IMG/VR virus record: IMGVR_UViG_3300014494_000005
Coordinates: 62,001 to 126,000 of that record
Reading direction: 5' to 3' (one strand)
Length of the DNA stretch: 64,000 nt
Below the pieces are notes generated by a model. The model was given only the letters and a program-made list of their open reading frames with translations, was not told the origin of the DNA and searched no databases. This document shows, in pieces, positions 4,245 to 47,128 of this stretch (position 1 is its first letter; each line of letters opens with the position of its first letter). A program made the position numbers and the translations under genes.

Positions 4245-4260
4245 TAATGTTTTAATTATA

Positions 4261-10084: not shown

Positions 10085-13000
10085 TTATTCTGGTGTTGGC
10101 TTACCACCACAACAGCAACAGCAAGAAATATTTGATGTTGTTTCACTTATTAAATATGGAGAACCAACAGTATATGTTCCAACACTATTTGTAATACCAC
10201 CAATCCAAAGTTCAGCAATATCTGATGCGCATTTTGTATTATCGCTTATAGCACATGTAAATAATTGTAAATTATCACTATGACATATAAGTTTAGTACC
10301 AAAACTACCATCATAATATCCACTACCTTTACCAAGATTAGCAACACTACAATTCCATCCACTAATTGTAGTACCATTACATTTTACACAAACACAAGTA
10401 ATATGATTTGCTGCACTTGTACCTTTACATATATAATAACAAATATTTACATAGTAACAATCACCAGCATTTGGTGGAGTAATAGTACCCGGTTGATATA
10501 CATTGGTAGGATAACAATATCCACCAGTACAAGTAATTACATTTACTACATGTGTTTGTGGTACACCATTTTGTTCAAATACAACAATTTTAGGTATTCC
10601 AACTGTTGGCGTATATATTGTACAGCCAGTTCTTGCAACTGTAGTTGATTGTATTGTAACACTTTGTGTTATACCTGCTGGAGTTGGTGGGGCAGGTGTT
10701 TGTGGTGTTAACCAAGTAATTGGTGTTACTCCACATACAGCAGATACTGTAAAAGTATTACTTATTTCACCAACAATAGTTACATTACATACTTGAGATG
10801 TTGCTGGAATATTTGTAAATAATGTTGGTGTTACATTAAATGTTGCAGTACTTCCAATTGGTCTGTATTGCATACCATACCATTGAACATCAGCATAACG
10901 TTGAATTGCATAACCACCAGTATAATAAAGTGCTGATGAAGAACTTGATGTACTTTGTTTTGTTTTACCTGATGGTGGTGTTGGGGGTGGTGTTGATAAC
11001 GTTTTTAATGATAATGTATTACCAGTATCCGCAAGAACATCTGAATGAACAACTGCTTTATAATTATATACAGTACCTTCTAATAAACCATTTATTGTAA
11101 AACTAAATGAATTAGTTGAAGGTTTACCTGATACAAAATGTTTTGTCCATGTTGTAGATGTTGATTTCTTATACATAACACCATATTCTCTTATAAGACT
11201 TAATCCGGTAATATTTTTACCACCAATATTTATCATCGAGCCAATACCAGCAGTACCTGCTTTAGTTTCAACATATAAATCAATAGGTGATGGTTCTGGA
11301 TTTTGTTTTATAATAAACATAGCACCATCATCGCCCAAATATTGTACTGTTCCTCTATATGTTAAATTACCAACACCAATAGGTGGAATAGAATTTCCAT
11401 AATCATAAGGATTTGGTTCTGGATTATAATAATATGTTGTTCCAGATGGAGAGACGTTTACACCTCTCTTATACATGAATTTTTGTTTAGTAAATACAGT
11501 ATTACGAATTAATAATCCACCCTTTTTTAATATAATTGTAGCTGACAATAATTGGTCTACAAATTTTTGAAAGAATGCATTATATTTACTTAAAAACGAA
11601 TATAAGTTTTCAAAAGTATATCCATTTGAATGCAAAGTATCTCCTGTTGGAAGCAATGCTCTTTGTAAATACATTTCATAAATTCTTAATAATGCAGGAT
11701 ACCAACCGCCTTTAAAATCTGATATAGTTTTTCTATTTCTTGCATTAATCATTTTTCTTTGAATTAATTCAATAAATTCTAAAAATGATAATTTACTTAT
11801 ATCCCCAATTCCAAAACTATCTGAAACAACTGGTGTGAATGCAGCATTTCCACCAACAAGATAATAAGCACTAAGAACATTCCCATATCTAAGACCATTT
11901 GGTAAATATACTTCGTATGGATTCATTACGTTAATATCATAATCTCTATATGGTTCTAATGCAATACCATCTACTAAAAATTTAATATCAGATGCTTTAT
12001 TTGCCTTATAATTTAATTTATAAACATACTTATTTGCACTAAGATTAAAATATATTTTACTATTATTAAAACTATCAATTCTTACCACTTCACTTCTTGC
12101 ATTAATATCATTACTACCATGAACTTCAACATATGCTACTTGAACTTCTGGATTAATTGCTAAAAATGAAATTACATCTGTATTTTGTAAAATAATTTGA
12201 CTATGACCAGTAGTATTATTTGGGTCAATAATATAATCTGCAGTAAATTGTGATGTGCCTTTTGTTAGTGCAATACCATTTATTGTTACTTGAACATCAC
12301 CACGTGGAAAACTTGGTAATGGAATATATGTATATGGAAATTGTGGTTTAATACGTGTTACAATATATTGAATCGTAATACCTGTAACTGGTCGTGTTCC
12401 ACCACTATAAATAAAAGTTGCTTCAATAACATCTCTACGATTATTTGAATTTGTTGCATAATTACCATTTAAAATTGTAAAACTATTTCCAGAAACACTA
12501 TAATCAGCACTTAAATATTCTGGGTCTAATACTTCTTCAGCAGTTAAATTACCCATACCAATAGGTGGAATATCACTACCATAACCATATGGGGGATTAA
12601 AAATACGTGGTGCGTTTAATAATATACCATTATAACGAACTTCAAAATAACCTTGAGTTTTATCATATGGTGTTGGAAGTTGAAATGTATTTGAAGTTCC
12701 AGTATAATCTAATGATATATTAACATATGAATATGGTAATGTATATCCACTATTATTTGCTGGAAAATCTACATTTTTAATATAATCATAAACATCATAT
12801 TCTATACCACGTGCCATATCTAATGCAATATCAACTTCTTTGGTATTAATTACAAGTTTACTATCTTTTTGATAATATTGTGGAGTATCATAATGAATTC
12901 TTGTTGTTGCACCCGTTTGAATCCAAGATTTTTTATTATCGACAGTTGAAGAAAGATTAAATCCTGCCATACGAAATACATCAAGATATGCTTGACCACT

Positions 13001-17166: not shown

Positions 17167-19013
17167 TATCCCACTTTTTTTCTTAAAAACACTGTAATAT
17201 CTTTTTGTGGATATTTAATTTCAAACATTGAATCTTGCATTGAATGAATTGTATTATTAACCACAGAAATTTCACCAGTAGTTGTATTTACTATTGGTTG
17301 TGCGATTATATTATTTGAATATTGTCCACCTACTTTATTATAAACCGTTATACCAATAACATTTATAACACCATTTGCTGCCAAAATTTCTTTTTGGAGT
17401 TGACCAAGAAATATGTCTTGATTCATTTCATGTGTATTAATATCAAGAAAATTTATAACAAGTGTTATAATACTATTCGCAACTTGATTATCTGATATAT
17501 TTTCAACATATACATCAATATCAAATGCTAAATTAAATATTTGACCATCCCTGATTTCAATGTAATCATTAATCATTCGATATTGTGATAAATATTCTGC
17601 AATATTTGCTTTTAATAAAGAATTACTTGTATTAGATAATTTACCATCCGAACCAATACCAAGTATTGGAATAACCACTTTATTATTTTCTTTATATGCA
17701 TTGGCTCGAAATGGAGAGCCAAATTTTCCCGGCATTTTATATACCTGTAATAAGTAATCTGTTAATGTTACACTTCTTTCTTGACTTGAAAAATTATATT
17801 TGATTAATTGTCTAATTTGTTCTACACTCAAACCATCATTTCCACCAATTGCTGGAATTGGATTTGTTACTTTTAAACTTCTTTGTACTGTTTGGTTATA
17901 ATCTTGACGAGAACCTGCTATTCTAAGATTATATGAACCAAATTGTGTAAGCACATCAGTACCGATATTTGAACTAATACCGCCACCTGTTCTATATCGT
18001 ACAAATAATGTATAATTTGCTTTAAGTTTTTCACCTAAAGCAGTATTATTTAAAAAATTTTCAAGAAAATAAACATTACTTACACCTTCTTTTAGAAAAC
18101 CTTCTTTAAATGCATTTACATCAGCATCACCAGAACCAAATGTTAATTTACAATAACCTTGTGGAGTATATTCTTTAATGAATTTTTTTGTTACATCAAT
18201 CCATGTTGCAGATTTCAATCCTTGTGTATTTGTATTAGCACTTGAACTTTGTGTATCTTCAACAAATACACGTTGTTGCGCTAAATAATCAACTTCAAAA
18301 TATCTATTATTTGTATTATAAAATTCACTAATTGGTGGATTTGTTGTATAATTAGTTCCTTCTAAAAGTATTATATTTTCAATTTCAATTACATCTGGGT
18401 CAGGTAATGTTATACTAAAAAATGGTATTACATCTGTTGAATTAATTATTTTTTTATATATATTTGTTCCACCATTTATAACAACTTCTCTTTTAGTAAC
18501 AAAATAACTTACAGGAATACCATTTGAATCTAAATTTGGTATAATTCTACGATTAGGGTCACCTAAACTACTAAATGGTGAATTCCAATCAATATTTGAT
18601 TGAGTTTCAAAAATTTTACCACCACCAATTACTTGTGCCCCCATATCTAAAACAGGATAATATGATGAGTCTGGAGCATTACCTAAAACAGGAACTACTA
18701 CTGTAAAATCTACAACTGTAACACTTGGTCTTCTTGCAGGAATATTAAATCCCATATTTTTTGCAATATTAAGAATCGATGACTTTTGTTGTGCATATTC
18801 TAAAATATTTTCCTGAAACGCCCTATCAGTATTGATACTCAAGTTATTGGCAACACCAGCATTTAAATCAATAAGCATTGCACCAACGCTTGAATCGGTA
18901 AAATCTTTAAGTACTTCAGGATACATTTGTTTAATTAAGGAAATTAAATCCATTCTTATTTCACTAAATGTTCGTGAACCATATTGAATTATATTTGTTG
19001 TATTATTAGCCAT
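17166..19013 (-). CDS. Baseplate wedge protein, T4 gp6-like
   Basis: RTFSEIR.DL..LIKQ.YP...DF..SSVG.MLIDL; LA...SI.NIAKNMG; NP..A.GG.D..SVEQIR; R.VT..DY. Confidence 0.85.
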   Translation of the reverse strand: MANNTTNIIQYGSRTFSEIRMDLISLIKQMYPEVLKDFTDSSVGAMLIDLNAGVANNLSINTDRAFQENILEYAQQKSSILNIAKNMGFNIPARRPSVTVVDFTVVVPVLGNAPDSSYYPVLDMGAQVIGGGKIFETQSNIDWNSPFSSLGDPNRRIIPNLDSNGIPVSYFVTKREVVINGGTNIYKKIINSTDVIPFFSITLPDPDVIEIENIILLEGTNYTTNPPISEFYNTNNRYFEVDYLAQQRVFVEDTQSSSANTNTQGLKSATWIDVTKKFIKEYTPQGYCKLTFGSGDADVNAFKEGFLKEGVSNVYFLENFLNNTALGEKLKANYTLFVRYRTGGGISSNIGTDVLTQFGSYNLRIAGSRQDYNQTVQRSLKVTNPIPAIGGNDGLSVEQIRQLIKYNFSSQERSVTLTDYLLQVYKMPGKFGSPFRANAYKENNKVVIPILGIGSDGKLSNTSNSLLKANIAEYLSQYRMINDYIEIRDGQIFNLAFDIDVYVENISDNQVANSIITLVINFLDINTHEMNQDIFLGQLQKEILAANGVINVIGITVYNKVGGQYSNNIIAQPIVNTTTGEISVVNNTIHSMQDSMFEIKYPQKDITVFLRKKVG

Positions 19014-19915
19014 TATATTATTCCCCCCAATATTTGATTGATATTATTAATTTCGTTATATTTTATTCTCAATAATTTAAAATTATTATTTTTTGTAAAT
19101 AAATTTTTAATTTCGTCATTTTTTTGTCGTAATTTAAATGCAATCTTACCACCAAAATAGTTAACCAATTTTAAATGTTGCAAACCATCATATTCAATTA
19201 ATAAATTTTGTTTAGGTAAATAAAAATCATAATATAGCAAACGTTTATTCTTACAACCATCAAATGTTTTTTCTCTAATATATTTAATATTTCGTTTATC
19301 TAAATATTTTTTTATGATTATTTCGCCCTTTGATTCGTTACATAATTTACATCCTTTACCACATAAATGAGCACCAGCCATTTGTTCAAAAATACCATGT
19401 TTATTACAAATAATTTTTATTTTATTGTTCCACCCATTATATTCAACTAATTTATAATTATATTTATTTTCGTGTATATTTTTTGCTCTATTTATAAATT
19501 CCAAATTATCTAATTTAAATATTTTACCATTTTCATTATATCCGCAATCAGGACAACCATTACCATTTAAATGATTTGTTGGCATTTGGTTAAAAACACC
19601 ATGTATTTTACAAACAATATTAACATTAGCGTGTGAACCGCAATACTTCACTAAATTATATTCATATTTATTACCATGAATAACTTTAGACTTTTCAATA
19701 AAATTAATCGTATTCATTTTTTTATTTTTCACACAATCAGGACAACCATTGCCATTTAAATGATTATTTGGTGTTTGTTCAAATTTACCATGCTTTGGAC
19801 AAATAATTATTATTTTATTTTGTGAACCATAATATTCAACTAAAGAATAATCATATTTATTTCCATGTATATTTATTGCTTTTTTTATAAACTCATTGGT
19901 TGTATATTTTTTCAT
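19013..19915 (-). CDS. Homing-endonuclease-like protein: 3 DUF723-like repeats + PD-(D/E)XK/Vsr-like nuclease
   Basis: Same repeat and YDFYLP..NLLIEYDG.QH nuclease as 3126-4244. Confidence 0.8.
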   Translation of the reverse strand: MKKYTTNEFIKKAINIHGNKYDYSLVEYYGSQNKIIIICPKHGKFEQTPNNHLNGNGCPDCVKNKKMNTINFIEKSKVIHGNKYEYNLVKYCGSHANVNIVCKIHGVFNQMPTNHLNGNGCPDCGYNENGKIFKLDNLEFINRAKNIHENKYNYKLVEYNGWNNKIKIICNKHGIFEQMAGAHLCGKGCKLCNESKGEIIIKKYLDKRNIKYIREKTFDGCKNKRLLYYDFYLPKQNLLIEYDGLQHLKLVNYFGGKIAFKLRQKNDEIKNLFTKNNNFKLLRIKYNEINNINQILGGII

Positions 19916-29435: not shown

Positions 29436-32400
29436 TTAAGCATAAAATATTTTATTTTTAATTGGTATTGCTTGCGGAGAATCCATAATATCTTCACCAT
29501 TTATATATAATTCTTCAATTTTTAATGATGTATTTTTAAATAATGTTATTTCTTTTTCATCTTCGCCAAGAGCCAAATCCATATTAGCATATATTGTATT
29601 AGTCCAATCAATATTGTCTTCTTTCACAGATGTTTTTATTATTGCTTTATTATATTTTTTACTATCTCCCCAATGTGCTTCAGCAGCATTTTCTTCCCAA
29701 GACCAATAAATACCTAAATGTTTTCCTTGTGTACCAATATGATAAATCCAATTATCATCAACTGTCATTTCTCTCCAAATATCAATAGTATCATTTGGTT
29801 TTATTTTTTCTTTTATTTTATCTATTACATCATCATATTTATATTTTAATTCCCATATAAACCATTCTTTAAAATCTTCATTTTGTTCAATAACTTCCTT
29901 ATCTTCATCCTCCAAATTATTTTCATATTTATAATATTCAATATATCTTTCATAATTATCACTACGTTTCACATCTTTTATATATTGCGGTGTTATTATA
30001 TTATCTGAAGTTATTGAATCAATTGGTGTTTCATTTAAAACATCATTATCTGTAAGTTTCCATAATAATTTATGTTTTAATTTTTCATTATGGCTAAAAT
30101 CTTCATAATTATTTTGTAAAAATTCTAATACTGATGCTTCATTTGGGTCTGAATATTCTGCTCTTCCTCTTCCACTTTCAGTATTCCATATATCATATTC
30201 TTTAGCAAAGAAATTAATATCAACTATTTTATTGTTTACAACATATTTACCATCACCAACTTCATGATATTCTTCAGTAAGATTAATAGGCATACTACCA
30301 TATTTAATAAGACCATAATATTCTAAATAAAAATCATATTGTGGATTTTTTCTTTTTGTTGCACGTAATATTTCAATTGATGTTTCTTTTTGGTCTTCAC
30401 CTCTTTGAATAAATTCTTCACCCGAATCACTCAATCCAAAATTATTAGAATCACTTACTCTTTGTAATACTTGATAATTGAAATTATTATATACATATTC
30501 GGTAATTCCTAATATATCTGCCATATCTGCATGATTAAAAGCACCATCAGATTGTGCAACAAATAAGTTTCCATCACTATCAGCAATTGCTCTAACATTT
30601 TTATCAAAATTAGTTAACGATTTTGGATTCTTAAAAAATAAATCACCCTCTTCACTAATTGCATATGGTTTTTCTTTATTTTTTTCTATACCACCCATTG
30701 CTTTAACATCCATTGCAGTATTTGAATCAGGAACATTAAAAGTTTTTTCTGCATATTTATCTGCAACACCTTCTTGTTTTATTGATTTATTTTTTTGACT
30801 TGTCAAATTTAATAAATCATCTCGATTATTCCTAACATTATTTGAATATACCTTTAACAATAATGATTTTAACATATCACCAATCTCTTTACCTTTTAAT
30901 CCAAATTGAATTAAATCATTGCCATTAATTGCTAGTTCACCAACTGCTTTTGGATATTTGCCTTGTAATAATTCTTGTGCTGCGGTTTCAATTACACTAG
31001 GTATTATTTGGCTTTGAAGTGATTGTGGTGATGTTACATACATATTATGCACAACTGTTCGTGCTTCAATTAAATTAGTTGCTTCACCACTATCAAATGC
31101 CATTTCAAGTGCTTTAATTTCCTTATAAGTATCAATATCACCCTTTAAATTATTTTTATAAAATTCTGCAGGATTTGGTAATAATCGTATTAATAAATAA
31201 ATAAACTCACCTATTGTTTTAACTTCTTCAAATGGACTTCTATCAATTGTTGATTGTTTTAAATCAAAATTAAAAATTTGTTGAAATAAACCAGTGTCTT
31301 TAAGTAGTTGTATACCAATACGTTTGTCACCTTTTTTTAAAATTTTATCGAACTCAATTAATATTCTTTCTGGCGGAATTTCTTTAATACGACTTGCATT
31401 ATCTTTAATCATTTGCATTGTTTGTGGTTCAATTGTAAAATCAAAACGACTTGCAAACCCTATCATTCGCATCATACGTAATGGGTCATCTGAAAATGCC
31501 TGTGGATTTGCAGCAGAAATTTGTTTATTTTTTATATCTTCCAATCCACCGAGTGGGTCAATAAATTTACCTGAATTAATATTAATTGCCATTGCATTCA
31601 GCTTTGCGTCACGTCTCGTCAAATCATCTTCAATTGGAAGATTTTCATCACTCTGAACATCAAAACCATGATAACCACCTTCACCATTTGGTTTTTCTTT
31701 ACGTGGTAACGCTATATCATAATCAGTACCATCTTTATCAATAAATTTTATAACACCAAATGATTTGCCAACAACATCAACTTTACCAAATTTTTGTAAT
31801 TGCGATATTAATAAATCAATTGATGTGTTTCTAACAATTAAATCAATATCTTTATTGGGTTTGTTAAGTACCAAATCTCTCACAACCCCACCAACAGCAT
31901 AAATTTCAGACCCTAAGTCATTTATAAGTGATTGAATAAATGGTTTTTGTTTTAAATTATTTACAAATTCAGTAATTTTATTATTTGGTTGTATATTGTT
32001 TTCGCACATATTCTCTGCAATATTTATTGAATCTAAATCAAAAACTACTTTAGCTGGAAATGATGAAATTCCTAATTCTCGTAATGCATCAAATCTATGA
32101 CCACCTTCTAAAACATATGAACCATCTTCATCAATAACAACAATTAGTGGACTAATTTCTTTATTATATTCAATCTGTTTTGCTAATTTTTTTGTTTTTT
32201 GTTCTTCATCAGGAGAATAATATTTTAAATCTCCCATTTGTGGAAATGAATTGAATGAAACTTCTCTAATTCCATTAAGTATTTCATAATTTGTTAATGA
32301 TGCTTCAATTGAATTCATGTTTGGAACATCATTTCGAATTATTAATCCATTAATATTATTTCCATTTATTATTGGAAATTCATGATTTAATGTTTCATAA

Positions 32401-32498
32401 CTAAAATTTTGTGCATTACTGATAACAGATTCATTAATTTGTTTTCTCATATAATTTTCAAATAATATTATTTCACTATTAATAATGTCTATTAGCAT
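29436..32498 (-). CDS. Polyvalent protein: ParB-like + class II CCA-adding/poly(A) polymerase-family nucleotidyltransferase + two unknown domains + ADP-ribosyltransferase-like domain
   Basis: EGGHRFDAL (ParB); YAVGGVVRDL...KDIDL, DDLTRRDAKLNAMA, FSDDPLRMMR, PERI..EF.K (CCA); IWRE / GIYWSW / EDEKEI (R-S-E ART). Start moved to MLIDII (32498), 13 nt from the motif. Confidence 0.85.
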   Translation of the reverse strand: MLIDIINSEIILFENYMRKQINESVISNAQNFSYETLNHEFPIINGNNINGLIIRNDVPNMNSIEASLTNYEILNGIREVSFNSFPQMGDLKYYSPDEEQKTKKLAKQIEYNKEISPLIVVIDEDGSYVLEGGHRFDALRELGISSFPAKVVFDLDSINIAENMCENNIQPNNKITEFVNNLKQKPFIQSLINDLGSEIYAVGGVVRDLVLNKPNKDIDLIVRNTSIDLLISQLQKFGKVDVVGKSFGVIKFIDKDGTDYDIALPRKEKPNGEGGYHGFDVQSDENLPIEDDLTRRDAKLNAMAININSGKFIDPLGGLEDIKNKQISAANPQAFSDDPLRMMRMIGFASRFDFTIEPQTMQMIKDNASRIKEIPPERILIEFDKILKKGDKRIGIQLLKDTGLFQQIFNFDLKQSTIDRSPFEEVKTIGEFIYLLIRLLPNPAEFYKNNLKGDIDTYKEIKALEMAFDSGEATNLIEARTVVHNMYVTSPQSLQSQIIPSVIETAAQELLQGKYPKAVGELAINGNDLIQFGLKGKEIGDMLKSLLLKVYSNNVRNNRDDLLNLTSQKNKSIKQEGVADKYAEKTFNVPDSNTAMDVKAMGGIEKNKEKPYAISEEGDLFFKNPKSLTNFDKNVRAIADSDGNLFVAQSDGAFNHADMADILGITEYVYNNFNYQVLQRVSDSNNFGLSDSGEEFIQRGEDQKETSIEILRATKRKNPQYDFYLEYYGLIKYGSMPINLTEEYHEVGDGKYVVNNKIVDINFFAKEYDIWNTESGRGRAEYSDPNEASVLEFLQNNYEDFSHNEKLKHKLLWKLTDNDVLNETPIDSITSDNIITPQYIKDVKRSDNYERYIEYYKYENNLEDEDKEVIEQNEDFKEWFIWELKYKYDDVIDKIKEKIKPNDTIDIWREMTVDDNWIYHIGTQGKHLGIYWSWEENAAEAHWGDSKKYNKAIIKTSVKEDNIDWTNTIYANMDLALGEDEKEITLFKNTSLKIEELYINGEDIMDSPQAIPIKNKIFYA

Positions 32499-32510
32499 AA
32501 AAATCTTTAA

Positions 32511-32519
32511 TATAAATAC
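32511..32519 (-). promoter_or_regulatory. Phage GTATTTATA upstream motif (leftward of divergent pair)
   Basis: 13 nt before ATG 32498. Confidence 0.75.
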
Positions 32520-32589
32520 AATAAAAAAAATCAATATTTAAAATTTTAAATAAAATTTTGTCCATCATAATAAAATATTAATTATTGTA

Positions 32590-32598
32590 GTATTTATA
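32590..32598 (+). promoter_or_regulatory. Phage GTATTTATA upstream motif on plus strand (rightward of divergent pair)
   Basis: Reads GTATTTATA on plus, 67 nt before ATG 32665 of the only plus-strand gene. Confidence 0.7.
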
Positions 32599-32664
32599 TA
32601 CATTAGAAGAAGATTTAAATTTTTTCCGTAATTATATGTTCTATTTTTAATAAAAAACAAATGT

Positions 32665-33669
32665 ATGAAAAATTATGATATAAACGAAATTGCAAATTTA
32701 TATTTTATAAAAAAATACTCATTAGAAAAAATAGGAAAACTCATGCACGTACAGCCAAAAAAAATTAGCAATTTATTAAAGATAAATGGATATGTTTTAG
32801 ATAATAGGTCTCATGATGGTAATAGTAGAAGATATTATGTTGATAAAAATTTTTTTAAAAAAATTGATAATAAAAATAAAGCATATGTATTAGGATTAAT
32901 TATTTCAGATGGTTGCATTTATAAAAATGCAATTACATTCACATCTAAAGATATTGAGTTGGTTGAAATCTTAAAGAGAGAACTTAAATCCGAACATAAA
33001 TTAGCAACATATAATGTTTTTGATAAAAGAACAAATAAATATTATTTAAGAAATTCATTATCAATTCCATCTAAAGAAATTATTAATGATTTAAATAATT
33101 TGGGTGTTTTTTCTAAGAAATCCTTTGATTGTCAAATGCCAAATATACCTGAAGAATATTTTTGGCATTTTGTTAGAGGTATTTTTGATGGTGATGGAAC
33201 AATATTTAAAGCAACATCAAATAAGGAAGGATGTTTATATTTTTCAATTATTGGGTCGGAAAATTTATTGACAGAAATAAAAAATAAATTTAATTTAGTG
33301 GGAATATCTAATACAAAAATAATTAATACTGATTATAAATCAAACAATGGACATCTTATTAGAATTAATTACCATTCATTTCATGATGTTAATATATTAA
33401 AAAATAAAATATATTGTGATTCTGAAGACTTAAGGTTATCAAGAAAATATGATTTATTTCAAACACTAAGAGAATATAAAAAAGGTAATTTTGACCACAC
33501 AAAACAATTACGACAAATAAAAATGTATGATTTAAATAATAATTTTATTAAACATTTTAATAATTTTCATGAAGTAAAAAAAGAAACAGGATTATCATAT
33601 AAATCAATTCATAGAGTTGCGATGGGTATTAGAAAAAACACCAAAAAATATATATTTAAATATATTTAA
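32665..33669 (+). mobile_element. Free-standing two-motif LAGLIDADG homing endonuclease with C-terminal NUMOD1-like HTH
   Basis: AYVLGLIISDGCI and FVRGIFDGDGTI; C-terminal IKMYDLNNNFIKHF.N..E....G...I; only plus-strand gene. Confidence 0.85.
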
Positions 33670-36600
33670 TTTATTTTTTTCTTGTGTTCTCTTGCATAAT
33701 TATTTACAAACTTATTATATATATTTTCACTTATTTTATGATTCATACCGCTTTTTACTTTTTTTCTAAATTCTACTTCTGCTTTATTGGCAATTTCATG
33801 TGCACCATCTTTGCCACTATCGTCATTACTATACTTTAAGCCATAATATTTCATTAAATGTCTTTCTAGCGTTTCATGTAAAAGTATTGCACCTAAATCA
33901 TCAGGTTTAATTAAAAATACATCATCAATCCAAATTTCGTCTTCAGGAATATATTTAGCATATTTTTGCTCTTTCTTTGGTAAATCCAAATCAACGTAAT
34001 GATGTCCACCGTCAACATATTCATCGAACGAATTTTTTCTCACATGGTCACCATTAATTGCATATACTTTATAGTCATCTTCTTGAAATAAGAACAATTT
34101 ATCTAATCCATGTATTTTATTGTCTTTTTCAATTTGCTTTTCAAAATCCTTAAATGATTGTTCATTAAGATTATTATTTTTCATTAAAACTAAATAACCA
34201 CCATCACCATCTTCAGCAATAATTTCGCCAGTTAAATCAAATTCATCAATATCTGAAAAATCATTTTCATTTGAATATCTTGTAGCATCTTCAAATGTTT
34301 TTGTAACCCAGACAATATTATTAGCAGGATATTTATTCAATTCAGCTAATTTTTCTTCAGGTATATTCATTTCTTCATTACCAAGTTCATCTCTTTCAAA
34401 CCTAACAACATCTCCAGCAGATGTACCTTTTTTTTGTGAAAATAAACTATCTACCCGATATGCTTTACCAATATAATTAACATTTTCATTAATTGTTTTA
34501 ATATCAAGATTATTAATATCACCTTGATTACAAGCTACACTTGTATTTCCCAAACCACCTAATCTACATTTCTTTTTTACTGTAACAGCTTGTGCTCCTT
34601 TCATAAATGATTTTTTTCCAATTTCATCAAGAGCAAATTTATCTTGTGTTGCATCACCTACAACATGATGATATTCTAAATCTTCTTTTACACTTTCTGG
34701 AGTTGTTGGTACGTTATTATCTGTAACTGGAGATGTATCATTATTTTCATATGGTGGAAAATTATCCTGTCCAATACTATTTGGTGTTGAGAATTTTGAA
34801 GTTCCATCTTCAGTTATTTTTATATTTTCTGCACCATTCGGTTGTAAGTAACCATTACTAAATCCCACATCAAAAAATGCAATTACTCCATTTTTTTTAT
34901 ATCCTAAATTAGTATAATTAAAATAATCCAAACTTTCAACTCCATATTGTTTTGCTTCTTCAGCAATTCTTAATATAGAATAAAAAAATTCAGCATCTTC
35001 TGGATTTTTTGACATATATCCATCAATTTTTTTTGTATCTATGTCCCCATATCCATTTATATAATAATCAATAATATCATAAAGTCTGAGATTAAATATT
35101 TTTCCAAAAATAAAATCAATTCTTTCTTTAAGTCTTTTAAATTTTTGTGGGTCTGTTTTTAATTTTTCCAAAACAATTGCATATGTTTTAGAAATATATG
35201 TATTTTTTGAATCGATTGTAAATACATTATATGGTTGTGCTATATATTTTAATGGTTTATTTATAAGTTTTAAATTTTCTGCTGCTTCACTATTATCTGC
35301 AGTTATTTTTAAAATTTTATCATCACCAATATCATAAGCAACACCATATTCACCAGCATCAATAAATTTTGGTTCGTTATATCCTCTTATTTTAGCAATT
35401 TGTTTTGCGATATTATCTGCAATATTTCTATTATATTTTTCATCTAATATTTCTTCGTTTTCAGGTAAAAATATAATATTTGCATCTCCCAAATCAGGTT
35501 CATTAACGCCATAATAATCACCAACATCAAAAAATTTTAAAATACCATCCTCATATCCAAGATTTTTGGGATTACTATAATCATCTGATTTAATATTATA
35601 ACTCAACAGTTCTTTTTTTATTTCAAATAATTCTATTAACCAATCATATGCTTGTTGTCTTTCAATATTAGAAATATTTACTTCAGGTTTTTCTGTAAGT
35701 ATATTTTTTGCCAAATTAACTAAATTATTATAATCAAAACGTTTTTTCATTATAATATAGAAATCAACTGTCGTCATATCATTTGGCATAATAGTATCTA
35801 TTATTTCAACATTTCGAACAAATTGTTGAACTGGTTTGTCAATAATATTACGTTCAATTATTCCAAAAAATGATTTATTTTTTTCAGTATCAACTATTTT
35901 ATATATATTGTAAACAATTGCAATATGTATTGGTTTTACTCTTATTAATTTAGCTGCAGCATCTGCTTCACTAATATCAGTAGTAAGTTTTAAAATCTTT
36001 GTATCTCCAATATCAAATACATGACCACCAGTACTACCTGCCATATATTCTATAGTTTTTATTCCTAATTTTTCTGCAATTGAATTTGCTAATTGAATTG
36101 CATAATTTTTATCAAATACGATGTCTTGAACTTGTGGTACTTCATGTTTAATATCTTCATTTATAACATATTCTTCACTACTAAGTGGTTCTCTATCATA
36201 ATAATTTTGTGAAATAAGATATTTTTGAAGTTCTAATAAATTATTATAAAATTTTTTCTTATCATCAACATGATTTAATGTTTCCTTAAGATTATTTACA
36301 CATTCATGAAAATTATCTACAAGTTGTGGCATATTTTTTATAGGCTTATTTGGATATATGCTTCTTCTTATAATAAATTCTTTAAATTCTTCATTTATTA
36401 CACCATCGCCATCACCTACACCATATGGCATTAATGCCCACATTCCATGTCTTTGGTCTTGTCCAACGTTACCTATATCGGAAAGAATATCATCATTACC
36501 ATTAGCAAAATTATACAATTCATACATGTGATATTTTTGTTTTTTTTGAGGACTATAATGAGTATCATATACTTCATCATTAAGACCATAATCAGTTAAT

Positions 36601-37157
36601 ACAATTGTGGGTTGACCATCATGAAGTACTTCACCATAAGAACTTGGTCTACTTAAATCACCAACATTTATTGAATAATTTGCAACAAAATCAATTAAAT
36701 CAATAACAAATTCATTATTATCTAATTGATTTTTAATATTTTCATCTTGTCCAAATATTGGTCTACCACCTCTATTTTCAGATTCATAGTTTCTTAAATA
36801 ATAAAATAAATCGCTAAGACTTGGAATACCAGTTAATTCTTTGATTCTCTTTTCACCCACCTTTTTTACTTTTTCCGCAATCAACCAACTATCATCATCT
36901 GCATTGTCATAAATAATTGTAACAATATGTTGTGTATCTCTATAATATCCAATATTGGCTTCGGCTTCATTTTGTGCAATACCTTTTTGATTTTTTGCTA
37001 ATTTTAATACTTTCTGACCATCAATATCATAAACAATTCTACCACTACCACTACCAATTCTTGATAGATGTTCATTAGCATATTGTATTCTACTTGCAAA
37101 TGATTTTATGTTAAGAAATTCCGTTAAGAAATTCTGTTTAAATTCATCGTATGTCAT
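33666..37157 (-). CDS. Polyvalent protein: three tandem protein-kinase-like domains + ART-like domain + zincin metallopeptidase
   Basis: Gly loops GSGSGRIVY / AGSTGGHVF / AGEYGVAY; VLKL / ILKL / ILKI; D...N.G and DYG/DVG x3; AYR...WVT..A.RY; LLHETLE...AHEIA. Confidence 0.85.
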   Translation of the reverse strand: MTYDEFKQNFLTEFLNIKSFASRIQYANEHLSRIGSGSGRIVYDIDGQKVLKLAKNQKGIAQNEAEANIGYYRDTQHIVTIIYDNADDDSWLIAEKVKKVGEKRIKELTGIPSLSDLFYYLRNYESENRGGRPIFGQDENIKNQLDNNEFVIDLIDFVANYSINVGDLSRPSSYGEVLHDGQPTIVLTDYGLNDEVYDTHYSPQKKQKYHMYELYNFANGNDDILSDIGNVGQDQRHGMWALMPYGVGDGDGVINEEFKEFIIRRSIYPNKPIKNMPQLVDNFHECVNNLKETLNHVDDKKKFYNNLLELQKYLISQNYYDREPLSSEEYVINEDIKHEVPQVQDIVFDKNYAIQLANSIAEKLGIKTIEYMAGSTGGHVFDIGDTKILKLTTDISEADAAAKLIRVKPIHIAIVYNIYKIVDTEKNKSFFGIIERNIIDKPVQQFVRNVEIIDTIMPNDMTTVDFYIIMKKRFDYNNLVNLAKNILTEKPEVNISNIERQQAYDWLIELFEIKKELLSYNIKSDDYSNPKNLGYEDGILKFFDVGDYYGVNEPDLGDANIIFLPENEEILDEKYNRNIADNIAKQIAKIRGYNEPKFIDAGEYGVAYDIGDDKILKITADNSEAAENLKLINKPLKYIAQPYNVFTIDSKNTYISKTYAIVLEKLKTDPQKFKRLKERIDFIFGKIFNLRLYDIIDYYINGYGDIDTKKIDGYMSKNPEDAEFFYSILRIAEEAKQYGVESLDYFNYTNLGYKKNGVIAFFDVGFSNGYLQPNGAENIKITEDGTSKFSTPNSIGQDNFPPYENNDTSPVTDNNVPTTPESVKEDLEYHHVVGDATQDKFALDEIGKKSFMKGAQAVTVKKKCRLGGLGNTSVACNQGDINNLDIKTINENVNYIGKAYRVDSLFSQKKGTSAGDVVRFERDELGNEEMNIPEEKLAELNKYPANNIVWVTKTFEDATRYSNENDFSDIDEFDLTGEIIAEDGDGGYLVLMKNNNLNEQSFKDFEKQIEKDNKIHGLDKLFLFQEDDYKVYAINGDHVRKNSFDEYVDGGHHYVDLDLPKKEQKYAKYIPEDEIWIDDVFLIKPDDLGAILLHETLERHLMKYYGLKYSNDDSGKDGAHEIANKAEVEFRKKVKSGMNHKISENIYNKFVNNYAREHKKKIN

Positions 37158-39261: not shown

Positions 39262-40044
39262 TTATTTTTCATCTTCATATGACTTAAACACAAGTGTAAT
39301 ATATTCTATTAAATGAGGTACAATATCTAAATATTTCATTTCAGAAACACTATACCAACCATATTTTGTATTTTCATCATTTAATTTAACATCTGTTTCT
39401 TCACCAGTATATCTACAAGCAAATACATGTTCAATACTATCAGTATGTCTTTGAATACTAAATGTTTTTATAAATTTTTTAATTTCTAATTTAGTTTCTT
39501 CAAGAATTTCTCTTTCAATCGCTTGTTGTGGTTTTTCACCCTTTTTAATTTCACCGCCAACTAATGACCATTTATTTGGCATCCAAATTTTACTATCATC
39601 TGCTCTTTTAAGTAATAAAATTTTGTTATTATTATTAACAATTACTGCAACTGCGTTTTTTTTTAATTCTTTCTTTTCTTCATTTAACCTTGGTGTTTGA
39701 TATGGCATTAATTCTGAATTAGGATTTGTTGTCATATCTTGTTTAATTTTTTTTGACCTTTCAATACTTGCACGGTCTTGATTTAATGTTGTTTCAATAA
39801 AATTTTTCATTAAATCACCGCCAGCAAGTGCGTATTGTATTTTATCTCCAGTTTGTGGATTAAAATAATCAAAAAAATTCTTTAATCTTTTTAATGCTTG
39901 ATATGTCAAAACACCGTTTTTAAGTATAAAATTAGCTCGTTTTAGACCATCTGTATCTGAAGTGGATGCTTTTGCTATCTCAATACTTTTAAGTATATTT
40001 TGAGGTATATAATATTGTTTATTTAGTAATTCTTGATTTGCCAT
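39262..40044 (-). CDS. Two-domain protein: N-terminal unknown + Nudix hydrolase
   Basis: Nudix box GGEIKKGEKPQQAIEREILEETKL; ILLLKRA; W.LVGG. Confidence 0.85.
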   Translation of the reverse strand: MANQELLNKQYYIPQNILKSIEIAKASTSDTDGLKRANFILKNGVLTYQALKRLKNFFDYFNPQTGDKIQYALAGGDLMKNFIETTLNQDRASIERSKKIKQDMTTNPNSELMPYQTPRLNEEKKELKKNAVAVIVNNNNKILLLKRADDSKIWMPNKWSLVGGEIKKGEKPQQAIEREILEETKLEIKKFIKTFSIQRHTDSIEHVFACRYTGEETDVKLNDENTKYGWYSVSEMKYLDIVPHLIEYITLVFKSYEDEK

Positions 40045-41285
40045 TATGATGTCATTATATTAACTGTAGATTTATTTATTATTCTTATCATATCTTTAAT
40101 TTTATCACAAGTAATATTAATTTGATTATCAATATCTTTCAAAAATTCTTTTTCATTAATTCTTATAATATGACAATTGTGTTTTTCCTTAAGATAATTT
40201 TCACGTATAATATCTCTTTCTTTACATTTTATTTTATTATGATTAATTTCATCCCATTCAATACATATATTATATTTCTCAATATAACCATCCACCCAAT
40301 ATCTTATAAATTTTTTCTCACCGCCATTTAATGCATGTTGAATTGGTAAACCTAGCTTTTCGGAAATCATATCTAAATAAATTATTGAATTCGCATTATA
40401 TGATGGAACACGTTTTTTCCAAATTTCACCATATCTTTCAATCATAGTATTTACAATTTTTTCTGAAACCAATTTATTTTGTGAGGGATATTCAACACCA
40501 AATCTTTCTAAACTCGTTTTTTTTATTTTATCTTTAATCTCTAAAGAAGAATTTGGATTCTTCACACCATATCTTTTCAAATTTGTTTTATTTGCCTTTT
40601 CTTTAACATTTTTATTCAATAATGAACATTCAACACCATATTTAATTAAATTAGTTCTTTTAATTTTTTCTTTGGTATCAGATGATTGTAAATTATATTC
40701 AACACCAAATTTTTTCAAACATGTTTGTTTTTTCTTTTCTTTAATTTTGGCAGATTGTGAATTATGTTCAACACCAAATTTTAATAAATTGGTTTGTTTT
40801 ATTTTATTTTTAGTATCTTTACACAATAAATTTGTTGTTGTGCCAAATTTTTTCAAACATGTTTGTTTTCTCTTTTCTCTAACTTCTGCTAATTGTGATT
40901 GATGCTCAACACCATGTTTTTCGAAAAATAATTTTTTTCTTTTTTCTTGTACTTCTAGTGATTGTAATGGATTTTCAACGCCATATTTTTTCAAATAACC
41001 TTGTTTTATTCTATTTTTAATATCCTCATCAGAACCTTTACATTTTACTGAACAATGCGTAGTATAACCTCTATTAAATTTTATAAATTTAACTAAATTA
41101 CCACACTTACATTTCGGTAATTCAGATATATTATTTAGATAATTAAATAACATTTGTCCCCAATTTGTTATCTTAAAATTTTTGTTAAATTCTATTATGT
41201 TATTAAGTTCATTAGGAAATTCAGTTCTTATTTGCGAAATTCCTTTATAACCACCATCTAAAAAATTTAAAAAATTATTATTCAT
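40044..41285 (-). CDS. Homing-endonuclease-like protein with KQT.LKKFGV repeats and C-terminal PD-(D/E)XK-like domain
   Basis: About 8 repeats K.KQTCLKKFGV....QS..IK; C-terminal YWVDGYIEKYNICIEWDE..H. Confidence 0.7.
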   Translation of the reverse strand: MNNNFLNFLDGGYKGISQIRTEFPNELNNIIEFNKNFKITNWGQMLFNYLNNISELPKCKCGNLVKFIKFNRGYTTHCSVKCKGSDEDIKNRIKQGYLKKYGVENPLQSLEVQEKRKKLFFEKHGVEHQSQLAEVREKRKQTCLKKFGTTTNLLCKDTKNKIKQTNLLKFGVEHNSQSAKIKEKKKQTCLKKFGVEYNLQSSDTKEKIKRTNLIKYGVECSLLNKNVKEKANKTNLKRYGVKNPNSSLEIKDKIKKTSLERFGVEYPSQNKLVSEKIVNTMIERYGEIWKKRVPSYNANSIIYLDMISEKLGLPIQHALNGGEKKFIRYWVDGYIEKYNICIEWDEINHNKIKCKERDIIRENYLKEKHNCHIIRINEKEFLKDIDNQINITCDKIKDMIRIINKSTVNIMTS

Positions 41286-45991: not shown

Positions 45992-47128
45992 TTATATGGT
46001 TGTATTAATTAAATTTATAATATTATTTATTTTATTACAAACAATGTTAATTTGATTGTCAATATCTTTAAGAAATTCTTTTTCATTAATTCTTATAATA
46101 TGACAATTGTGCTTTTCTTTAAGAAAATTTTCTCTAATTAAATCACGTTCTTTTTGTTTTGTTTCGTTATGACTAATTTCATCCCATTCAATACAAATAT
46201 TATATTTTTCAATATATCCATCAACCCAATATCTTATAAATTTCTTTTCACCGCCATTTAATGCATGTTGTATTGGTAAACCCAATTTTTCTGAAATTAT
46301 ATCTAAATAAATTATTGAATTTGCATTATATTTGGGAGCGTGTTTTAGCCATAATTCACCATATCTTTCAATCATTGTGTTTTTTGCTTTTTCAGAATAT
46401 TTTTTATTCATAGTAATATTTTCAACACCGTATTTTTTAAGATTGGTTTGTTTTATCTTTTCTCTTACTTCTTTATTTTGTAGCGTATATTCACAGCCAT
46501 ATCTTTTTAAATTAGTTTGTTTTGTTTTTTCTTTAATTTCATTAGAATTAACTGGATTTTTATATCCATATCTTTCCAAATTGGTTTTTTCTGATTTTTC
46601 TTTAAATTCTTTAGTATTAAAAAAGTAATTAACACCATATTTTTTCAAATCATTTTGTTTTTTCTTTTCTTTAATTATATTAGATTGTGAATTATGTTTA
46701 CAACCAAATTTTTTTATAGTCGTTTCTTTTATTTTATTTTTGGTGTCTTCACATAATAAATTTGTTGTAACACCAAATTTTTTTAAACACGTTTGTCTTG
46801 TTTTTTGTTTAATTTCATCTGAATTAACTGGATTTTTATATCCATATTTTTTTAAATTTGTTTCATAATATTTATTAATTGAACATTTGTCTGAACATCC
46901 GTAATAACCACCAGATTTAATATTTTTATTATAAACCTTATATGTTAAATATTTTTCTTTTCCACATATATCACATTTAACATGAACCATACAATGACTT
47001 CCATTTTTTAAATCAGAAACTTTAATTAAAATTTTATTATTAATTTTTGTAAAAACATAACCTTTATTTTGATAATATTTTTTATTACTTGCATGCCATA
47101 TTGTTTCAACAAATTCATCCAATATCAT
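45992..47128 (-). CDS. Homing-endonuclease-like protein, paralog of 40044-41285
   Basis: N-terminal CDIC/C..C Zn module, KQT.LKKYG repeats, near-identical C-terminal domain. Confidence 0.7.
   Translation of the reverse strand: MILDEFVETIWHASNKKYYQNKGYVFTKINNKILIKVSDLKNGSHCMVHVKCDICGKEKYLTYKVYNKNIKSGGYYGCSDKCSINKYYETNLKKYGYKNPVNSDEIKQKTRQTCLKKFGVTTNLLCEDTKNKIKETTIKKFGCKHNSQSNIIKEKKKQNDLKKYGVNYFFNTKEFKEKSEKTNLERYGYKNPVNSNEIKEKTKQTNLKRYGCEYTLQNKEVREKIKQTNLKKYGVENITMNKKYSEKAKNTMIERYGELWLKHAPKYNANSIIYLDIISEKLGLPIQHALNGGEKKFIRYWVDGYIEKYNICIEWDEISHNETKQKERDLIRENFLKEKHNCHIIRINEKEFLKDIDNQINIVCNKINNIINLINTTI

What the first reader, a model, noticed from the sequence alone, without database searches (positions are those of the whole stretch)
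29436..37157. Candidate virion-packaged polyproteins punctuated by prohead-protease (I/L)-x-E sites
Seen: in both giant ORFs nearly every boundary between recognisable domains carries an (I/L/V)-x-E tripeptide. In 29436-32498: QINE (32430-38), KITE (31968-76), IKQE (30771-82), NLTE (30273-81), VLNE (30030-38). In 33666-37157: VINE (36390-98), VINE (36156-64), ILDE (35439-47), KITE (34809-17), SVKE (34683-91), ALDE (34623-31), TINE (34485-93), NLNE (34161-69). Established: the T4 prohead protease gp21 cleaves after Glu in (I/L)-X-E and processes head-packaged proteins, including the ADP-ribosyltransferase Alt that is injected with the DNA. Inference: these ORFs are cassette-like polyproteins packaged into the head and cut into about a dozen separate effectors (kinases, ARTs, peptidase, CCA enzyme) delivered at infection. 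That would be a virus-polyprotein strategy for an anti-defence/host-takeover payload. Caveat: the tripeptide is short and also occurs by chance.
Basis: partly seen in the sequence, partly recalled or inferred. Interest (0 to 1): 0.9.

Follow-up and report, generated by a model that had tools for sequence, protein, structure and literature searches.

The report
Huge-phage modular effector polyprotein, candidate
Two giant genes of a 349-kb uncultured phage encode strings of enzyme modules joined by short linkers that each keep an aliphatic-x-Glu motif across more than a hundred relatives. The first gene also starts with a leader like the head-targeting signal of phage T4, which points to a cargo packed into the capsid and cut into separate enzymes, though cutting and packaging are not shown.

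Summary
All 13 tripeptides are at the stated coordinates, and 12 fit (I/L/V)-x-E. The raw count is not what matters, because other proteins of this phage have a similar density of the motif. What matters is where the sites lie and how well they are kept. They fall on the points where homology to 180 relatives breaks. The Glu is kept in 57-100% of aligned relatives, while the middle residue and the codons vary. Six of the seven listed sites that fall in the two modelled regions lie in predicted disordered or inter-domain linkers; the seventh sits in a milder confidence dip. Across the family, 41% of homology break points sit on [ILVM]-x-E, against 12% of random positions. D/K/N/Q/S at the last position, or A/G/S at the first, are depleted.

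[quoted passage not shown] Internal copies of the same module never carry this leader.

The two ORFs are one gene in relatives, split here by a LAGLIDADG endonuclease gene. They belong to the "polyvalent proteins" described in 2017.

- Supported: three minimal kinases, a ParB-like module and a CCA-adding enzyme.
- Not supported in these two ORFs: ADP-ribosyltransferase modules.
- Uncertain: the peptidase.
- Not found: a prohead protease, in the 163 kb of 349 kb that I could read.

The parts
37119..37157 (-). ORF B residues 1-13: N-terminal leader M-T-Y-D-E-F...L-T-E, a candidate capsid-targeting sequence ending in an L-x-E site
   Evidence: It aligns with the N-termini of T4 ipII/ipIII/ipI read from the T4 record. 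It is the only ORF in 47 kaa of this phage that starts this way. The leader is present in 35 of 76 relatives that have this module at their N-terminus, and in 0 of 20 internal copies.
36390..37118 (-). ORF B residues 14-256: minimal protein-kinase-like module 1, ending in I-N-E
   Evidence: phrog_4301. A profile of this module hits the N-lobe of a minimal effector kinase in PDB at E = 1.3e-5. Site 256 is kept in 86% of 97 relatives.
36156..36389 (-). ORF B residues 257-334: small module of unknown function, ending in I-N-E
   Evidence: Alignment break points at 320-340. Site 334 is kept in 72% of 68 relatives.
35439..36155 (-). ORF B residues 335-573: kinase-like module 2, a paralogue of module 1, ending in L-P-E / L-D-E
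   Evidence: Internal alignment of the three copies. Break points at 540-580. Sites 566 and 573 are kept in 78% and 69%.
34809..35438 (-). ORF B residues 574-783: kinase-like module 3, ending in I-T-E
   Evidence: Site 783 keeps Glu in 99 of 104 relatives.
34623..34808 (-). ORF B residues 784-845: conserved but predicted-disordered stretch with sites V-K-E (825) and L-D-E (845)
   Evidence: pLDDT is below 50. Glu is kept in 86% and 92% of relatives.
34485..34622 (-). ORF B residues 846-891: 46-residue two-Cys mini-module, the most widespread piece of the family, ending in I-N-E
   Evidence: It is found in 112 segments of 180 relatives. 73 alignments end at 890-899. Model confidence is low. Function is unknown.
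34161..34484 (-). ORF B residues 892-999: folded module of unknown function, ending in L-N-E
   Evidence: AlphaFold domain at B894-992 with pLDDT 70-86. No PDB fold match. Not ART-PolyVal by hhalign. Site 999 is kept in 100% of 18 relatives.
33669..34160 (-). ORF B residues 1000-1163: C-terminal module with conserved HExxER...AH..A.K.E, a possible zincin-like domain
   Evidence: AlphaFold pLDDT 85-95. Conserved residues. Only weak fold hits (E > 1), several of them to zinc peptidases and ArdC. It also occurs as a stand-alone protein or in short proteins.
32665..33669 (+). LAGLIDADG homing endonuclease gene on the opposite strand, filling the gap between ORF B and ORF A
   Evidence: PF14528 and phrog_4645. 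Relatives have one undivided giant ORF at this place. No group I intron was detected.
32430..32498 (-). ORF A residues 1-23: new N-terminus ending in I-N-E; the start codon is uncertain (the gene caller starts at residue 17)
   Evidence: No relative aligns here.
31968..32429 (-). ORF A residues 24-177: ParB-like module, ending in I-T-E
   Evidence: phrog_1033 at 3.5e-7. Weak ParB_N and PDB ParB hits. Site 177 is kept in 54% of 37 relatives.
30771..31967 (-). ORF A residues 178-576: class II CCA-adding enzyme / poly(A) polymerase family module, ending in K-Q-E
   Evidence: PF01743 at 8.5e-22 and PF12627 at 4.5e-18. PDB CCA-adding enzymes at about 1e-23. Glu 576 is kept in 67 of 72 relatives.
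30273..30770 (-). ORF A residues 577-742: folded module of unknown function, ending in L-T-E
   Evidence: AlphaFold pLDDT about 90, with the linker at 742-744 below 50. Five tandem copies occur in relative P0002. No PDB match.
30030..30272 (-). ORF A residues 743-823: small module of unknown function, ending in L-N-E
   Evidence: Break points. Site 823 has Glu in 38 of 38 and Leu/Ile in 37 of 38 relatives.
29439..30029 (-). ORF A residues 824-1020: C-terminal module of unknown function
   Evidence: AlphaFold. The one significant fold match of the whole A574-1020 model, which I did not assign to a module, is an uncharacterised Klebsiella phage protein (E = 4.9e-4).

Best explanation
ORF B and ORF A are the two halves of one giant 'polyvalent' effector gene of a 349-kb T4-related myophage. 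A homing endonuclease gene has split it here.

The protein is a chain of independently folding modules:
- three minimal kinases;
- a ParB-like module;
- a CCA-adding enzyme;
- several modules of unknown function;
- one possible zincin-like module.

Each joint carries a conserved aliphatic-x-Glu motif, and the chain starts with a short leader resembling the T4 capsid-targeting sequence.

The most likely mechanism has three steps:
1. The leader brings the precursor into the prohead core.
2. A Glu-specific prohead protease of the T4 gp21 type cuts after the Glu at the leader and at the joints.
3. The separate enzymes stay in the head and enter the cell with the DNA, where they act on host defence and tRNA or protein targets.

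Shown: the modular build, the motif at the joints and its conservation, and the leader similarity. Inferred: packaging, cleavage, which protease does it, and what the modules do in the cell.
For: - **Phage identity.** The window matches the 348,923-bp viral contig IMGVR_UViG_3300014494_000005, whose copy of ORF B is 100% identical. The phage has T4-like baseplate, sheath and tube genes.
- **Mosaic family.** 2,623 cluster representatives match B. Relatives recombine the same modules with GNAT, 2H/Acb1-like, ART-PolyVal and other domains.
- **One gene in relatives.** Syntenic relatives carry one 1,699-1,971-aa ORF that combines B-like and A-like modules.
- **Motif at the joints.**
  - Alignment ends fall exactly on the Glu of [ILVM]xE in 16.6% of cases, against 2.5% at random positions.
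  - Of 1,053 break-point peaks, 40.8% have the motif within 2 residues, against 12.2 +/- 1.0% at random positions.
  - [ILVM]x[DKNQS] and [AGS]xE are depleted.
- **Selection acts on the protein.** P1 Glu is kept in 57-100% of relatives, while P2 is free and the codons at P3 vary.
- **Sites lie in linkers.** They fall in predicted disordered linkers.
- **The leader is N-terminal only.** It resembles the T4 ipII/ipIII leader and is absent from internal copies of the module.
- **T4 precedent.** T4 gp21 cuts Alt at ITE-6 and LTE-619 and removes 10-20-residue targeting leaders (PMC5694885).
- **A protease acting in trans is needed.** Pfam finds no peptidase domain in the 25 largest relatives, and only 16 of 180 relatives carry B's C-terminal HExxE module.
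Against: - No prohead protease, portal or major capsid gene was found in the roughly 163 kb of the contig that I could read.
- There are no virion or proteomic data.
- The leader similarity rests on about six residues.
- [ILVM]xE is common inside domains too (23 sites in the 828 modelled residues), so the motif alone cannot define cutting.
- The window-only linker test is modest (P = 0.034).
- The family statistics count non-independent alignment pairs, and BLAST alignments tend to stop at conserved residues.
- ORF A has no leader of its own after the split, so its packaging is doubtful.
- The AlphaFold alignments were shallow (27-33 rows).
Confidence: 0.5

Rival explanations
1. The protein is an uncut multidomain enzyme that works in the cytoplasm, for example in tRNA repair and host takeover. 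On this reading, aliphatic-x-Glu at the joints is only the usual way these modules end, such as the last turn of a strand or helix plus an acidic cap, and was inherited as modules were copied and shuffled.
For: - The CCA-adding enzyme, 2H phosphoesterase and kinase-like modules recur together in relatives. That pairing would suit a tethered RNA-repair machine.
- The gene lies among replication and nucleotide-metabolism genes.
- The motif is also frequent and conserved inside domains.
Against: - The conserved Glu residues lie in segments predicted to be disordered, not at the ends of secondary structure.
- The same motif appears at joints between unrelated modules.
- Asp cannot replace Glu: [ILVM]xD is depleted at joints.
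- An N-terminal leader that internal copies lack is not explained.
Confidence: 0.22
2. The chain is cut at the joints, but not by the prohead protease. The cutter would be an embedded peptidase (the C-terminal HExxE module of ORF B) or a host or other phage protease, before packaging or after injection. This follows the 2017 proposal that metallopeptidase domains process polyvalent proteins.
For: - Polyvalent proteins were proposed to be processed by their own zincin-like domains (PMC5512222).
- B's C-terminal module has an invariant His-Glu pair and further conserved Glu, Arg and His residues.
- Its weak fold hits include several zinc peptidases and ArdC.
Against: - Only 16 of 180 relatives carry that module, yet the junction motif is general.
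- Pfam finds no peptidase in the 25 largest relatives.
- The motif is HExxE, not HExxH or HExxxH, and no fold hit is significant.
- The cut-site pattern matches the known specificity of T4 gp21, not of any known zincin.
Confidence: 0.15
3. The tripeptides are a chance result of the Ile-, Leu- and Glu-rich composition of an AT-rich genome.
For: - ORF A has no excess of the motif, and other proteins of the phage have similar densities.
Against: - The position at break points, the conservation in relatives and the controls with other residues all argue against chance.
Confidence: 0.02

Closest known systems
Polyvalent proteins of phages and conjugative elements (Iyer, Burroughs, Anand, de Souza, Aravind 2017, PMC5512222)
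   Same: - Many domains with unrelated activities sit in one phage polypeptide.
- The kinases are minimal ones lacking the C-lobe, as described for (pro)phages of Bacteroidetes and Verrucomicrobia.
- ParB-like, 2H, GNAT and ART-PolyVal modules occur in the family.
- The proteins are predicted to be delivered with the DNA and processed into units.
   Different: - The published processing agent is an embedded zincin-like peptidase, or rarely a C-terminal assemblin-like one. Here no recognised peptidase domain is present.
- Every joint instead carries a conserved aliphatic-x-Glu motif, together with a T4-like N-terminal leader. Full-text searches of the 2017 paper for 'linker', 'cleav' and 'prohead protease' returned nothing describing either feature.
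- A CCA-adding enzyme is a core module here; the term CCA does not occur in that paper.
T4 internal head proteins (IPI, IPII, IPIII) and Alt: capsid-targeting sequence plus gp21 cleavage
   Same: - A short N-terminal leader with the shared start M-(K)-T-Y/F-x-E-F, ending in aliphatic-x-Glu.
- Alt is cut at ITE and LTE, the same tripeptides as at several joints here.
- The T4 cargo is a diverse set of anti-defence or host-modifying proteins (PMC3012670).
   Different: - T4 packs many small single-function proteins, each with its own leader. Alt loses short peptides from both of its ends (ITE-6 and LTE-619); cutting between functional modules is not described there.
- Here one leader would serve up to about 15 modules, with internal sites between them.
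Giant-phage ejection proteins processed by the prohead protease (phiKZ gp175, SPN3US gp245)
   Same: Head-packaged proteins are cut after Glu at a three-residue motif, sometimes at several sites.
   Different: - Those proteases use S/A/G-x-E. That pattern is depleted at the joints here.
- All gp245 cleavages found in SPN3US substrates remove N-terminal propeptides; only the protease's own self-cleavage is C-terminal. They do not separate enzyme modules.
Viral polyproteins of RNA viruses
   Same: One translation product with protease sites at each domain border.
   Different: This is a dsDNA tailed phage. The product would be an accessory cargo, not the replication or structural proteins, and the protease is not part of the chain.

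Membership tests
Polyvalent proteins (Iyer et al. 2017) | Several domains with unrelated biochemical activities in one polypeptide | tested here: met
   Kinase-like x3, ParB-like, CCA-adding enzyme, plus at least five unassigned modules.
Polyvalent proteins (Iyer et al. 2017) | Encoded by a phage or conjugative element | tested here: met
   A 349-kb viral contig with baseplate, sheath and tube genes.
Polyvalent proteins (Iyer et al. 2017) | Hallmark domains of the published set (ART-PolyVal, minimal kinase, ParB, 2H, GNAT) in the protein or its direct relatives | tested here: met
   ART-PolyVal, 2H/Acb1, GNAT and ParB_N are fused to the same modules in relatives. The kinases fit the published description.
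Polyvalent proteins (Iyer et al. 2017) | Zincin-like metallopeptidase as the processing domain (common in the family, not universal) | tested here: inconclusive
   No Pfam peptidase. B's C-terminal module has HExxE and only weak zincin fold hits.
Polyvalent proteins (Iyer et al. 2017) | Delivered into the host together with the DNA | not testable with these tools
   Needs virion proteomics or infection experiments.
T4-type head-targeted proteins (CTS-bearing substrates of gp21) | N-terminal leader of 10-20 residues similar to the T4 capsid-targeting sequence | tested here: met
   Alignment with T4 ipI/ipII/ipIII from the T4 record. The motif is rare in this phage's proteins and specific to the N-terminus in the family. 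The similarity is short.
T4-type head-targeted proteins (CTS-bearing substrates of gp21) | Leader ends in (L/I)-x-E | tested here: met
   L-T-E at residues 11-13 of ORF B; L-P-E or L-N-E in relatives. 26 of 35 leaders are followed by the motif.
T4-type head-targeted proteins (CTS-bearing substrates of gp21) | A gp21/assemblin-type prohead protease in the same genome | tested here: inconclusive
   Not found in the window or in contig positions of about 33-196 kb, by PHROGs, precomputed Pfam or phmmer with T4 gp21. 186 kb of the contig was not read.
T4-type head-targeted proteins (CTS-bearing substrates of gp21) | Presence in virions in processed form | not testable with these tools
   The phage is uncultured.
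Class II CCA-adding enzyme / poly(A) polymerase family | Pol-beta head domain plus RNA-binding neck domain | tested here: met
   PF01743 at 8.5e-22 and PF12627 at 4.5e-18. PDB CCA enzymes at about 1e-23. Whether it adds CCA, or A only, was not tested.
ADP-ribosyltransferases (ART-PolyVal, PF18760) | Match to the family profile in ORF A or ORF B | tested here: not met
   No Pfam hit even at E = 10 on the pieces scanned separately at E = 10, which leave out the CCA module and B257-334. hhalign probability is below 3% for eight modules tested.
Zincin metallopeptidases | HExxH (or HExxxH) zinc-binding motif and a zincin fold | tested here: not met
   The motif is HExxE-R with a later A-H. The best fold hits have E > 1.

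The most novel reading that the evidence does not exclude
A large lineage of uncultured huge phages uses a plug-and-play effector polyprotein. One T4-like head-targeting leader carries a freely shuffled chain of up to about 15 enzyme cassettes into the prohead. These include kinases, a CCA-adding enzyme, Acb1-like 2H, GNAT and ART modules. The ordinary prohead protease then cuts the chain at a conserved aliphatic-x-Glu joint after every cassette. New anti-defence modules would become injected effectors simply by insertion between two joints.
Probability: 0.4. Interest if true: 0.8.

Novelty: new variant of a known kind. Interest (0 to 1): 0.66.

Why it matters
If the joints are real cut sites, this family shows how a dsDNA phage can deliver many enzymes at the first moment of infection from a single gene. 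Each module would need only a three-residue joint. That would explain the extreme shuffling seen in these proteins.

It would also give a simple rule, leader plus joints, for predicting injected phage effectors in metagenomes and for marking the borders of uncharacterised modules.

It would replace or complement the published idea that embedded metallopeptidases process polyvalent proteins.

The leader and joint could serve as parts for loading foreign proteins into phage heads in laboratory systems, as the T4 leader already does.

Tried and rejected
- **Nearest cultured relatives.** Megablast of the region against cultured phages found nothing. tblastn found only the first kinase-like module in four records, and the CCA domain widely. 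The DNA polymerase has only distant cultured relatives.
- **Leader search.** tblastn of the 35-residue N-terminus against phages found nothing. I therefore fetched the T4 record and aligned the N-termini directly.
- **Intron test.** Rfam found no group I intron around the LAGLIDADG gene, at either the gathering or the E-value threshold. The two ORFs are treated as truly separate.
- **Fold searches.** Searching both AlphaFold models against PDB gave no significant match. BFVD gave only one uncharacterised phage protein.
- **ART test.** hhalign of eight modules against ART-PolyVal segments of relatives was negative.
- **Neighbouring genes.** The conserved neighbours (237, 323 and 218 aa) have no PHROG, Pfam or PDB match.
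- **Protease hunt.**
  - I scanned the window ORFs of 100 aa or more with PHROGs.
  - I walked the source contig with all 12 look-ups, reading about 33-196 kb of 349 kb.
  - I ran phmmer with T4 gp17-gp23. Only sheath and tube were found.
- **Late promoter idea.** TATAAATA is enriched in the window (46 matches against 29 expected), but it is not placed in a way that singles out these ORFs, so I did not pursue it.
- **DNA-level recombination signal at the joints.** Rejected, because the codons vary while the residue class is kept.

Full report
**What is there**

The window is AT-rich (about 25% G+C). It comes from an uncultured phage. ORF B is 100% identical to a gene on the viral contig IMGVR_UViG_3300014494_000005 (348,923 bp), which places the window at about 62-126 kb of that contig. 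The phage has:
- baseplate wedge genes like T4 gp6 and gp25;
- a sheath and a tube that T4 gp18 and gp19 find directly (E = 6e-37 and 2e-5);
- its own DNA polymerase, helicase and primase, and many homing endonucleases.

No cultured phage is close.

**The observation**

All thirteen peptides are at the stated coordinates. Twelve fit (I/L/V)-x-E; 'IKQE' is I-x-x-E. The bare count is unremarkable. ORF A has 19 [IL]xE against 15.7 expected, and ORF B has 28 against 15.1. The polymerase and an SbcC-like protein have similar densities. The count is therefore not evidence. The position and conservation of the sites are.

**The modules**

ORF A (29436-32498, 1,020 aa) has:
- a ParB-like module;
- a class II CCA-adding enzyme;
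- three C-terminal modules that fold with high confidence but match nothing solved. One uncharacterised Klebsiella phage protein matches in BFVD.

ORF B (33666-37157, 1,163 aa) has:
- three paralogous modules of about 210-240 residues. Their profile hits the N-lobe of a minimal effector kinase at E = 1.3e-5. They fit the C-lobe-less kinases described for polyvalent proteins;
- a conserved but disordered stretch;
- a 46-residue two-Cys mini-module;
- a folded module of unknown function;
- a C-terminal module with conserved HExxER...AH..A.K.E. Its fold hits are all weak (E > 1), though several are zinc peptidases or ArdC.

No ADP-ribosyltransferase is detectable in either ORF.

**The family**

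ORF B matches 2,623 representatives of 50%-identity clusters, 225 of them at E <= 1e-30. The relatives are strikingly mosaic:
- P0018 holds B 1-546, B 561-1160 and A 166-824 in one chain.
- P0027 holds B 1-894, ART-PolyVal, the CCA enzyme, a 2H/Acb1-like domain and A 740-829.
- P0002 holds ART-PolyVal and five tandem copies of A 577-742.

Of the 25 longest relatives, 21 carry the CCA domain, 9 a GNAT, 8 a 2H domain and 5 ART-PolyVal. None has a Pfam peptidase.

In syntenic relatives the place of B + A is taken by one ORF of 1,699-1,971 aa. In the window a LAGLIDADG gene on the other strand (32665-33669) fills the gap between the stop of B and the start of A exactly. No group I intron is found there. 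One gene has therefore been split at a module joint.

**The joints**

End points of alignments between A or B and the relatives cluster at:
- A: about 150-190, 570-590, 720-750 and 820-830;
- B: about 10, 200-250, 320-340, 540-580, 760-790, 840-850, 890-900 and 990.

At these sites Glu is kept as follows:

| Site | Relatives keeping Glu |
|---|---|
| A823 | 38 of 38 |
| B999 | 19 of 19 |
| B783 | 99 of 104 |
| B891 | 92 of 102 |
| B256 | 87 of 98 |
| B845 | 72 of 79 |
| A576 | 67 of 72 |
| A742 | 14 of 20 |
| A177 | 23 of 39 |

P3 is almost always I, L, V or M, and P2 is free. Codons at P3 and P2 differ between relatives while the Glu stays, so selection acts on the protein and not on the DNA.

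Family-wide figures:
- Alignment ends that are internal to both partners fall exactly on the Glu of [ILVM]xE in 16.6% of cases, against 2.5% for random positions.
- Of 1,053 break-point peaks in 168 proteins, 40.8% have such a Glu within two residues, against 12.2 +/- 1.0% for random positions.
- [ILVM]x[D/K/N/Q/S] is 0.5-0.8 times the random level, and [AGS]xE is 0.4 times.
- The logo from 303 non-redundant joints is P3 L > I > V > M, P2 N/D, P1 E, P1' E/N/G/D.

In the two AlphaFold models, sites B783, B825, B845, B891, B999 and A742 lie in segments with pLDDT below 50, and A823 lies in an inter-domain dip. A test on the window alone is only modest (P = 0.034).

**The leader**

ORF B starts M-T-Y-D-E-F-K-Q-N-F-L-T-E. 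I read the N-termini of T4 ipI, ipII and ipIII from the T4 record. They share the start M-K-T-Y/F-x-E-F, and ipII and ipIII have I-A-E at residues 8-10.
- T[YF]x[DE]F occurs only three times in 47,061 residues of this phage's ORFs, and only ORF B starts with it.
- Of 76 relatives with this kinase module at the N-terminus, 35 have the strict leader and many others a looser form. In 26 of the 35 an [ILVM]xE follows.
- None of 20 internal copies of the module has the leader. 13 of them are instead preceded by a joint motif.

The leader is therefore a feature of the N-terminus, not part of the kinase fold.

T4 internal proteins are targeted to the prohead core by such a 10-20-residue leader, which gp21 removes. 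gp21 also cuts Alt at ITE-6 and LTE-619 (PMC5694885; PMC3012670).

**The protease**

I found none.
- PHROGs scans of the window's ORFs of 100 aa or more were negative.
- I walked the source contig from about 33 to 196 kb with exact-protein look-ups. I used the precomputed Pfam labels, two more PHROGs scans, and phmmer with T4 gp17-gp23.
- Sheath, tube, a T4_baseplate-like gene and many unknowns turned up, but no portal, protease or capsid gene.
- 186 kb remain unread.

Because the tail genes are recognisably T4-like, a T4-like head module is a reasonable expectation. It is not a result.

**Interpretation**

The best reading (about 0.5) is a head-targeted polyvalent precursor that a Glu-specific prohead protease cuts at its joints.

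The main rivals:
- An uncut cytoplasmic multi-enzyme, whose joints merely share an inherited end motif (about 0.22). The disorder of the joints, the exclusion of Asp and the N-terminal leader argue against it.
- Cutting by another protease, such as B's C-terminal module (about 0.15). Only 16 of 180 relatives have that module, it lacks HExxH, and it has no significant fold match to a zincin.
- Chance, which is excluded at the family level.

After the split, ORF A has no leader. Whether it is still packaged is open.

**Relation to what is known**

The proteins are members of the polyvalent proteins of Iyer et al. 2017. That paper already proposed packaging with the DNA and processing into units, mainly by embedded metallopeptidases, and noted rare C-terminal assemblin-like peptidases.

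I did not find the following described, either in that paper or in two further full-text searches:
- a conserved T4-gp21-type motif at essentially every module joint;
- a T4-like targeting leader at the N-terminus;
- a CCA-adding enzyme as a core module, in a very large family from uncultured huge phages.

This is a new variant of a known kind.

**Caveats**
- The alignment-end statistics use non-independent pairs, and BLAST tends to stop at conserved residues.
- The structure models rest on shallow alignments and cover only B 783-1163 and A 574-1020.
- The leader similarity is short.
- Nothing here shows expression time, packaging or cleavage.

Noticed in passing
window 32665-33669 (+), between ORF B (stop at 33666) and ORF A (start at 32498 or 32450): A LAGLIDADG homing endonuclease gene on the opposite strand fills the gap between the two giant ORFs exactly. 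Syntenic relatives (L006, L009, L011) have one undivided ORF of 1,699-1,971 aa at this place. The gene therefore appears to have been split at a module joint. No group I intron was detected.
   Followed up: yes
window 34485-34622 (ORF B residues 846-891): A 46-residue stretch with two Cys residues is the most widespread and best conserved piece of the whole family: 112 segments in 180 relatives. It is bounded by joint motifs on both sides and has moved independently in relatives. It is predicted with low confidence and matches no known family. Its role is unexplained.
   Followed up: partly
window 34623-34808 (ORF B residues 784-845): This stretch is predicted to be disordered yet its sequence is conserved across the family: mean column conservation of the non-motif residues across the disordered stretches B783-859 and 868-893 together is 0.59. 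It holds two joint motifs only 20 residues apart. It is not an ordinary variable linker.
   Followed up: partly
relatives P0004, P0025, P0027 and others: Relatives carry modules matching Pfam Acb1 (anti-CBASS 2H phosphoesterase), GNAT, ART-PolyVal, an NleE-like methyltransferase and a nucleoside 2-deoxyribosyltransferase-like domain, all in the same chains. P0002 has five tandem copies of the module at ORF A residues 577-742.
   Followed up: partly
window 3126-4268, 5733-6071, 19013-19915, 40044-41285, 45992-47128; L033 2416-5736: The density of homing endonuclease genes is unusually high. One HNH gene lies between the gp25-like and gp6-like baseplate genes. Two related endonuclease genes flank the DNA polymerase region. 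The DnaB-type helicase of the same genome carries intein-type Hom_end/LAGLIDADG domains.
   Followed up: no
window, 46 sites, many in short intergenic gaps (for example 2201, 9064, 14631, 21086, 27282, 37964, 39241, 41931, 47334, 49968, 56191, 57187): TATAAATA occurs 46 times against 28.9 +/- 5.6 expected. Many copies lie on the plus strand in the short gaps just upstream of minus-strand genes, reading TATTTATA on the coding strand. This may be a promoter or start-site element of this phage.
   Followed up: no
L037 12052-15186; L041 512-3763; L042 7091-9598; window 10085-14614: The same genome has further giant ORFs of 835-1,509 aa with no family match; one has a weak DUF3008 hit. None starts with the T4-like leader.
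   Followed up: partly
window 36393-37157 versus Xanthomonas phages XacN1 and Xoo-sp13 and two Alishewanella phages: Among cultured phages, the first kinase-like module occurs only as a stand-alone hypothetical protein of about 185 aa, in two jumbo Xanthomonas phages and two Alishewanella phages. These could serve as cultured models for testing the module.
   Followed up: no
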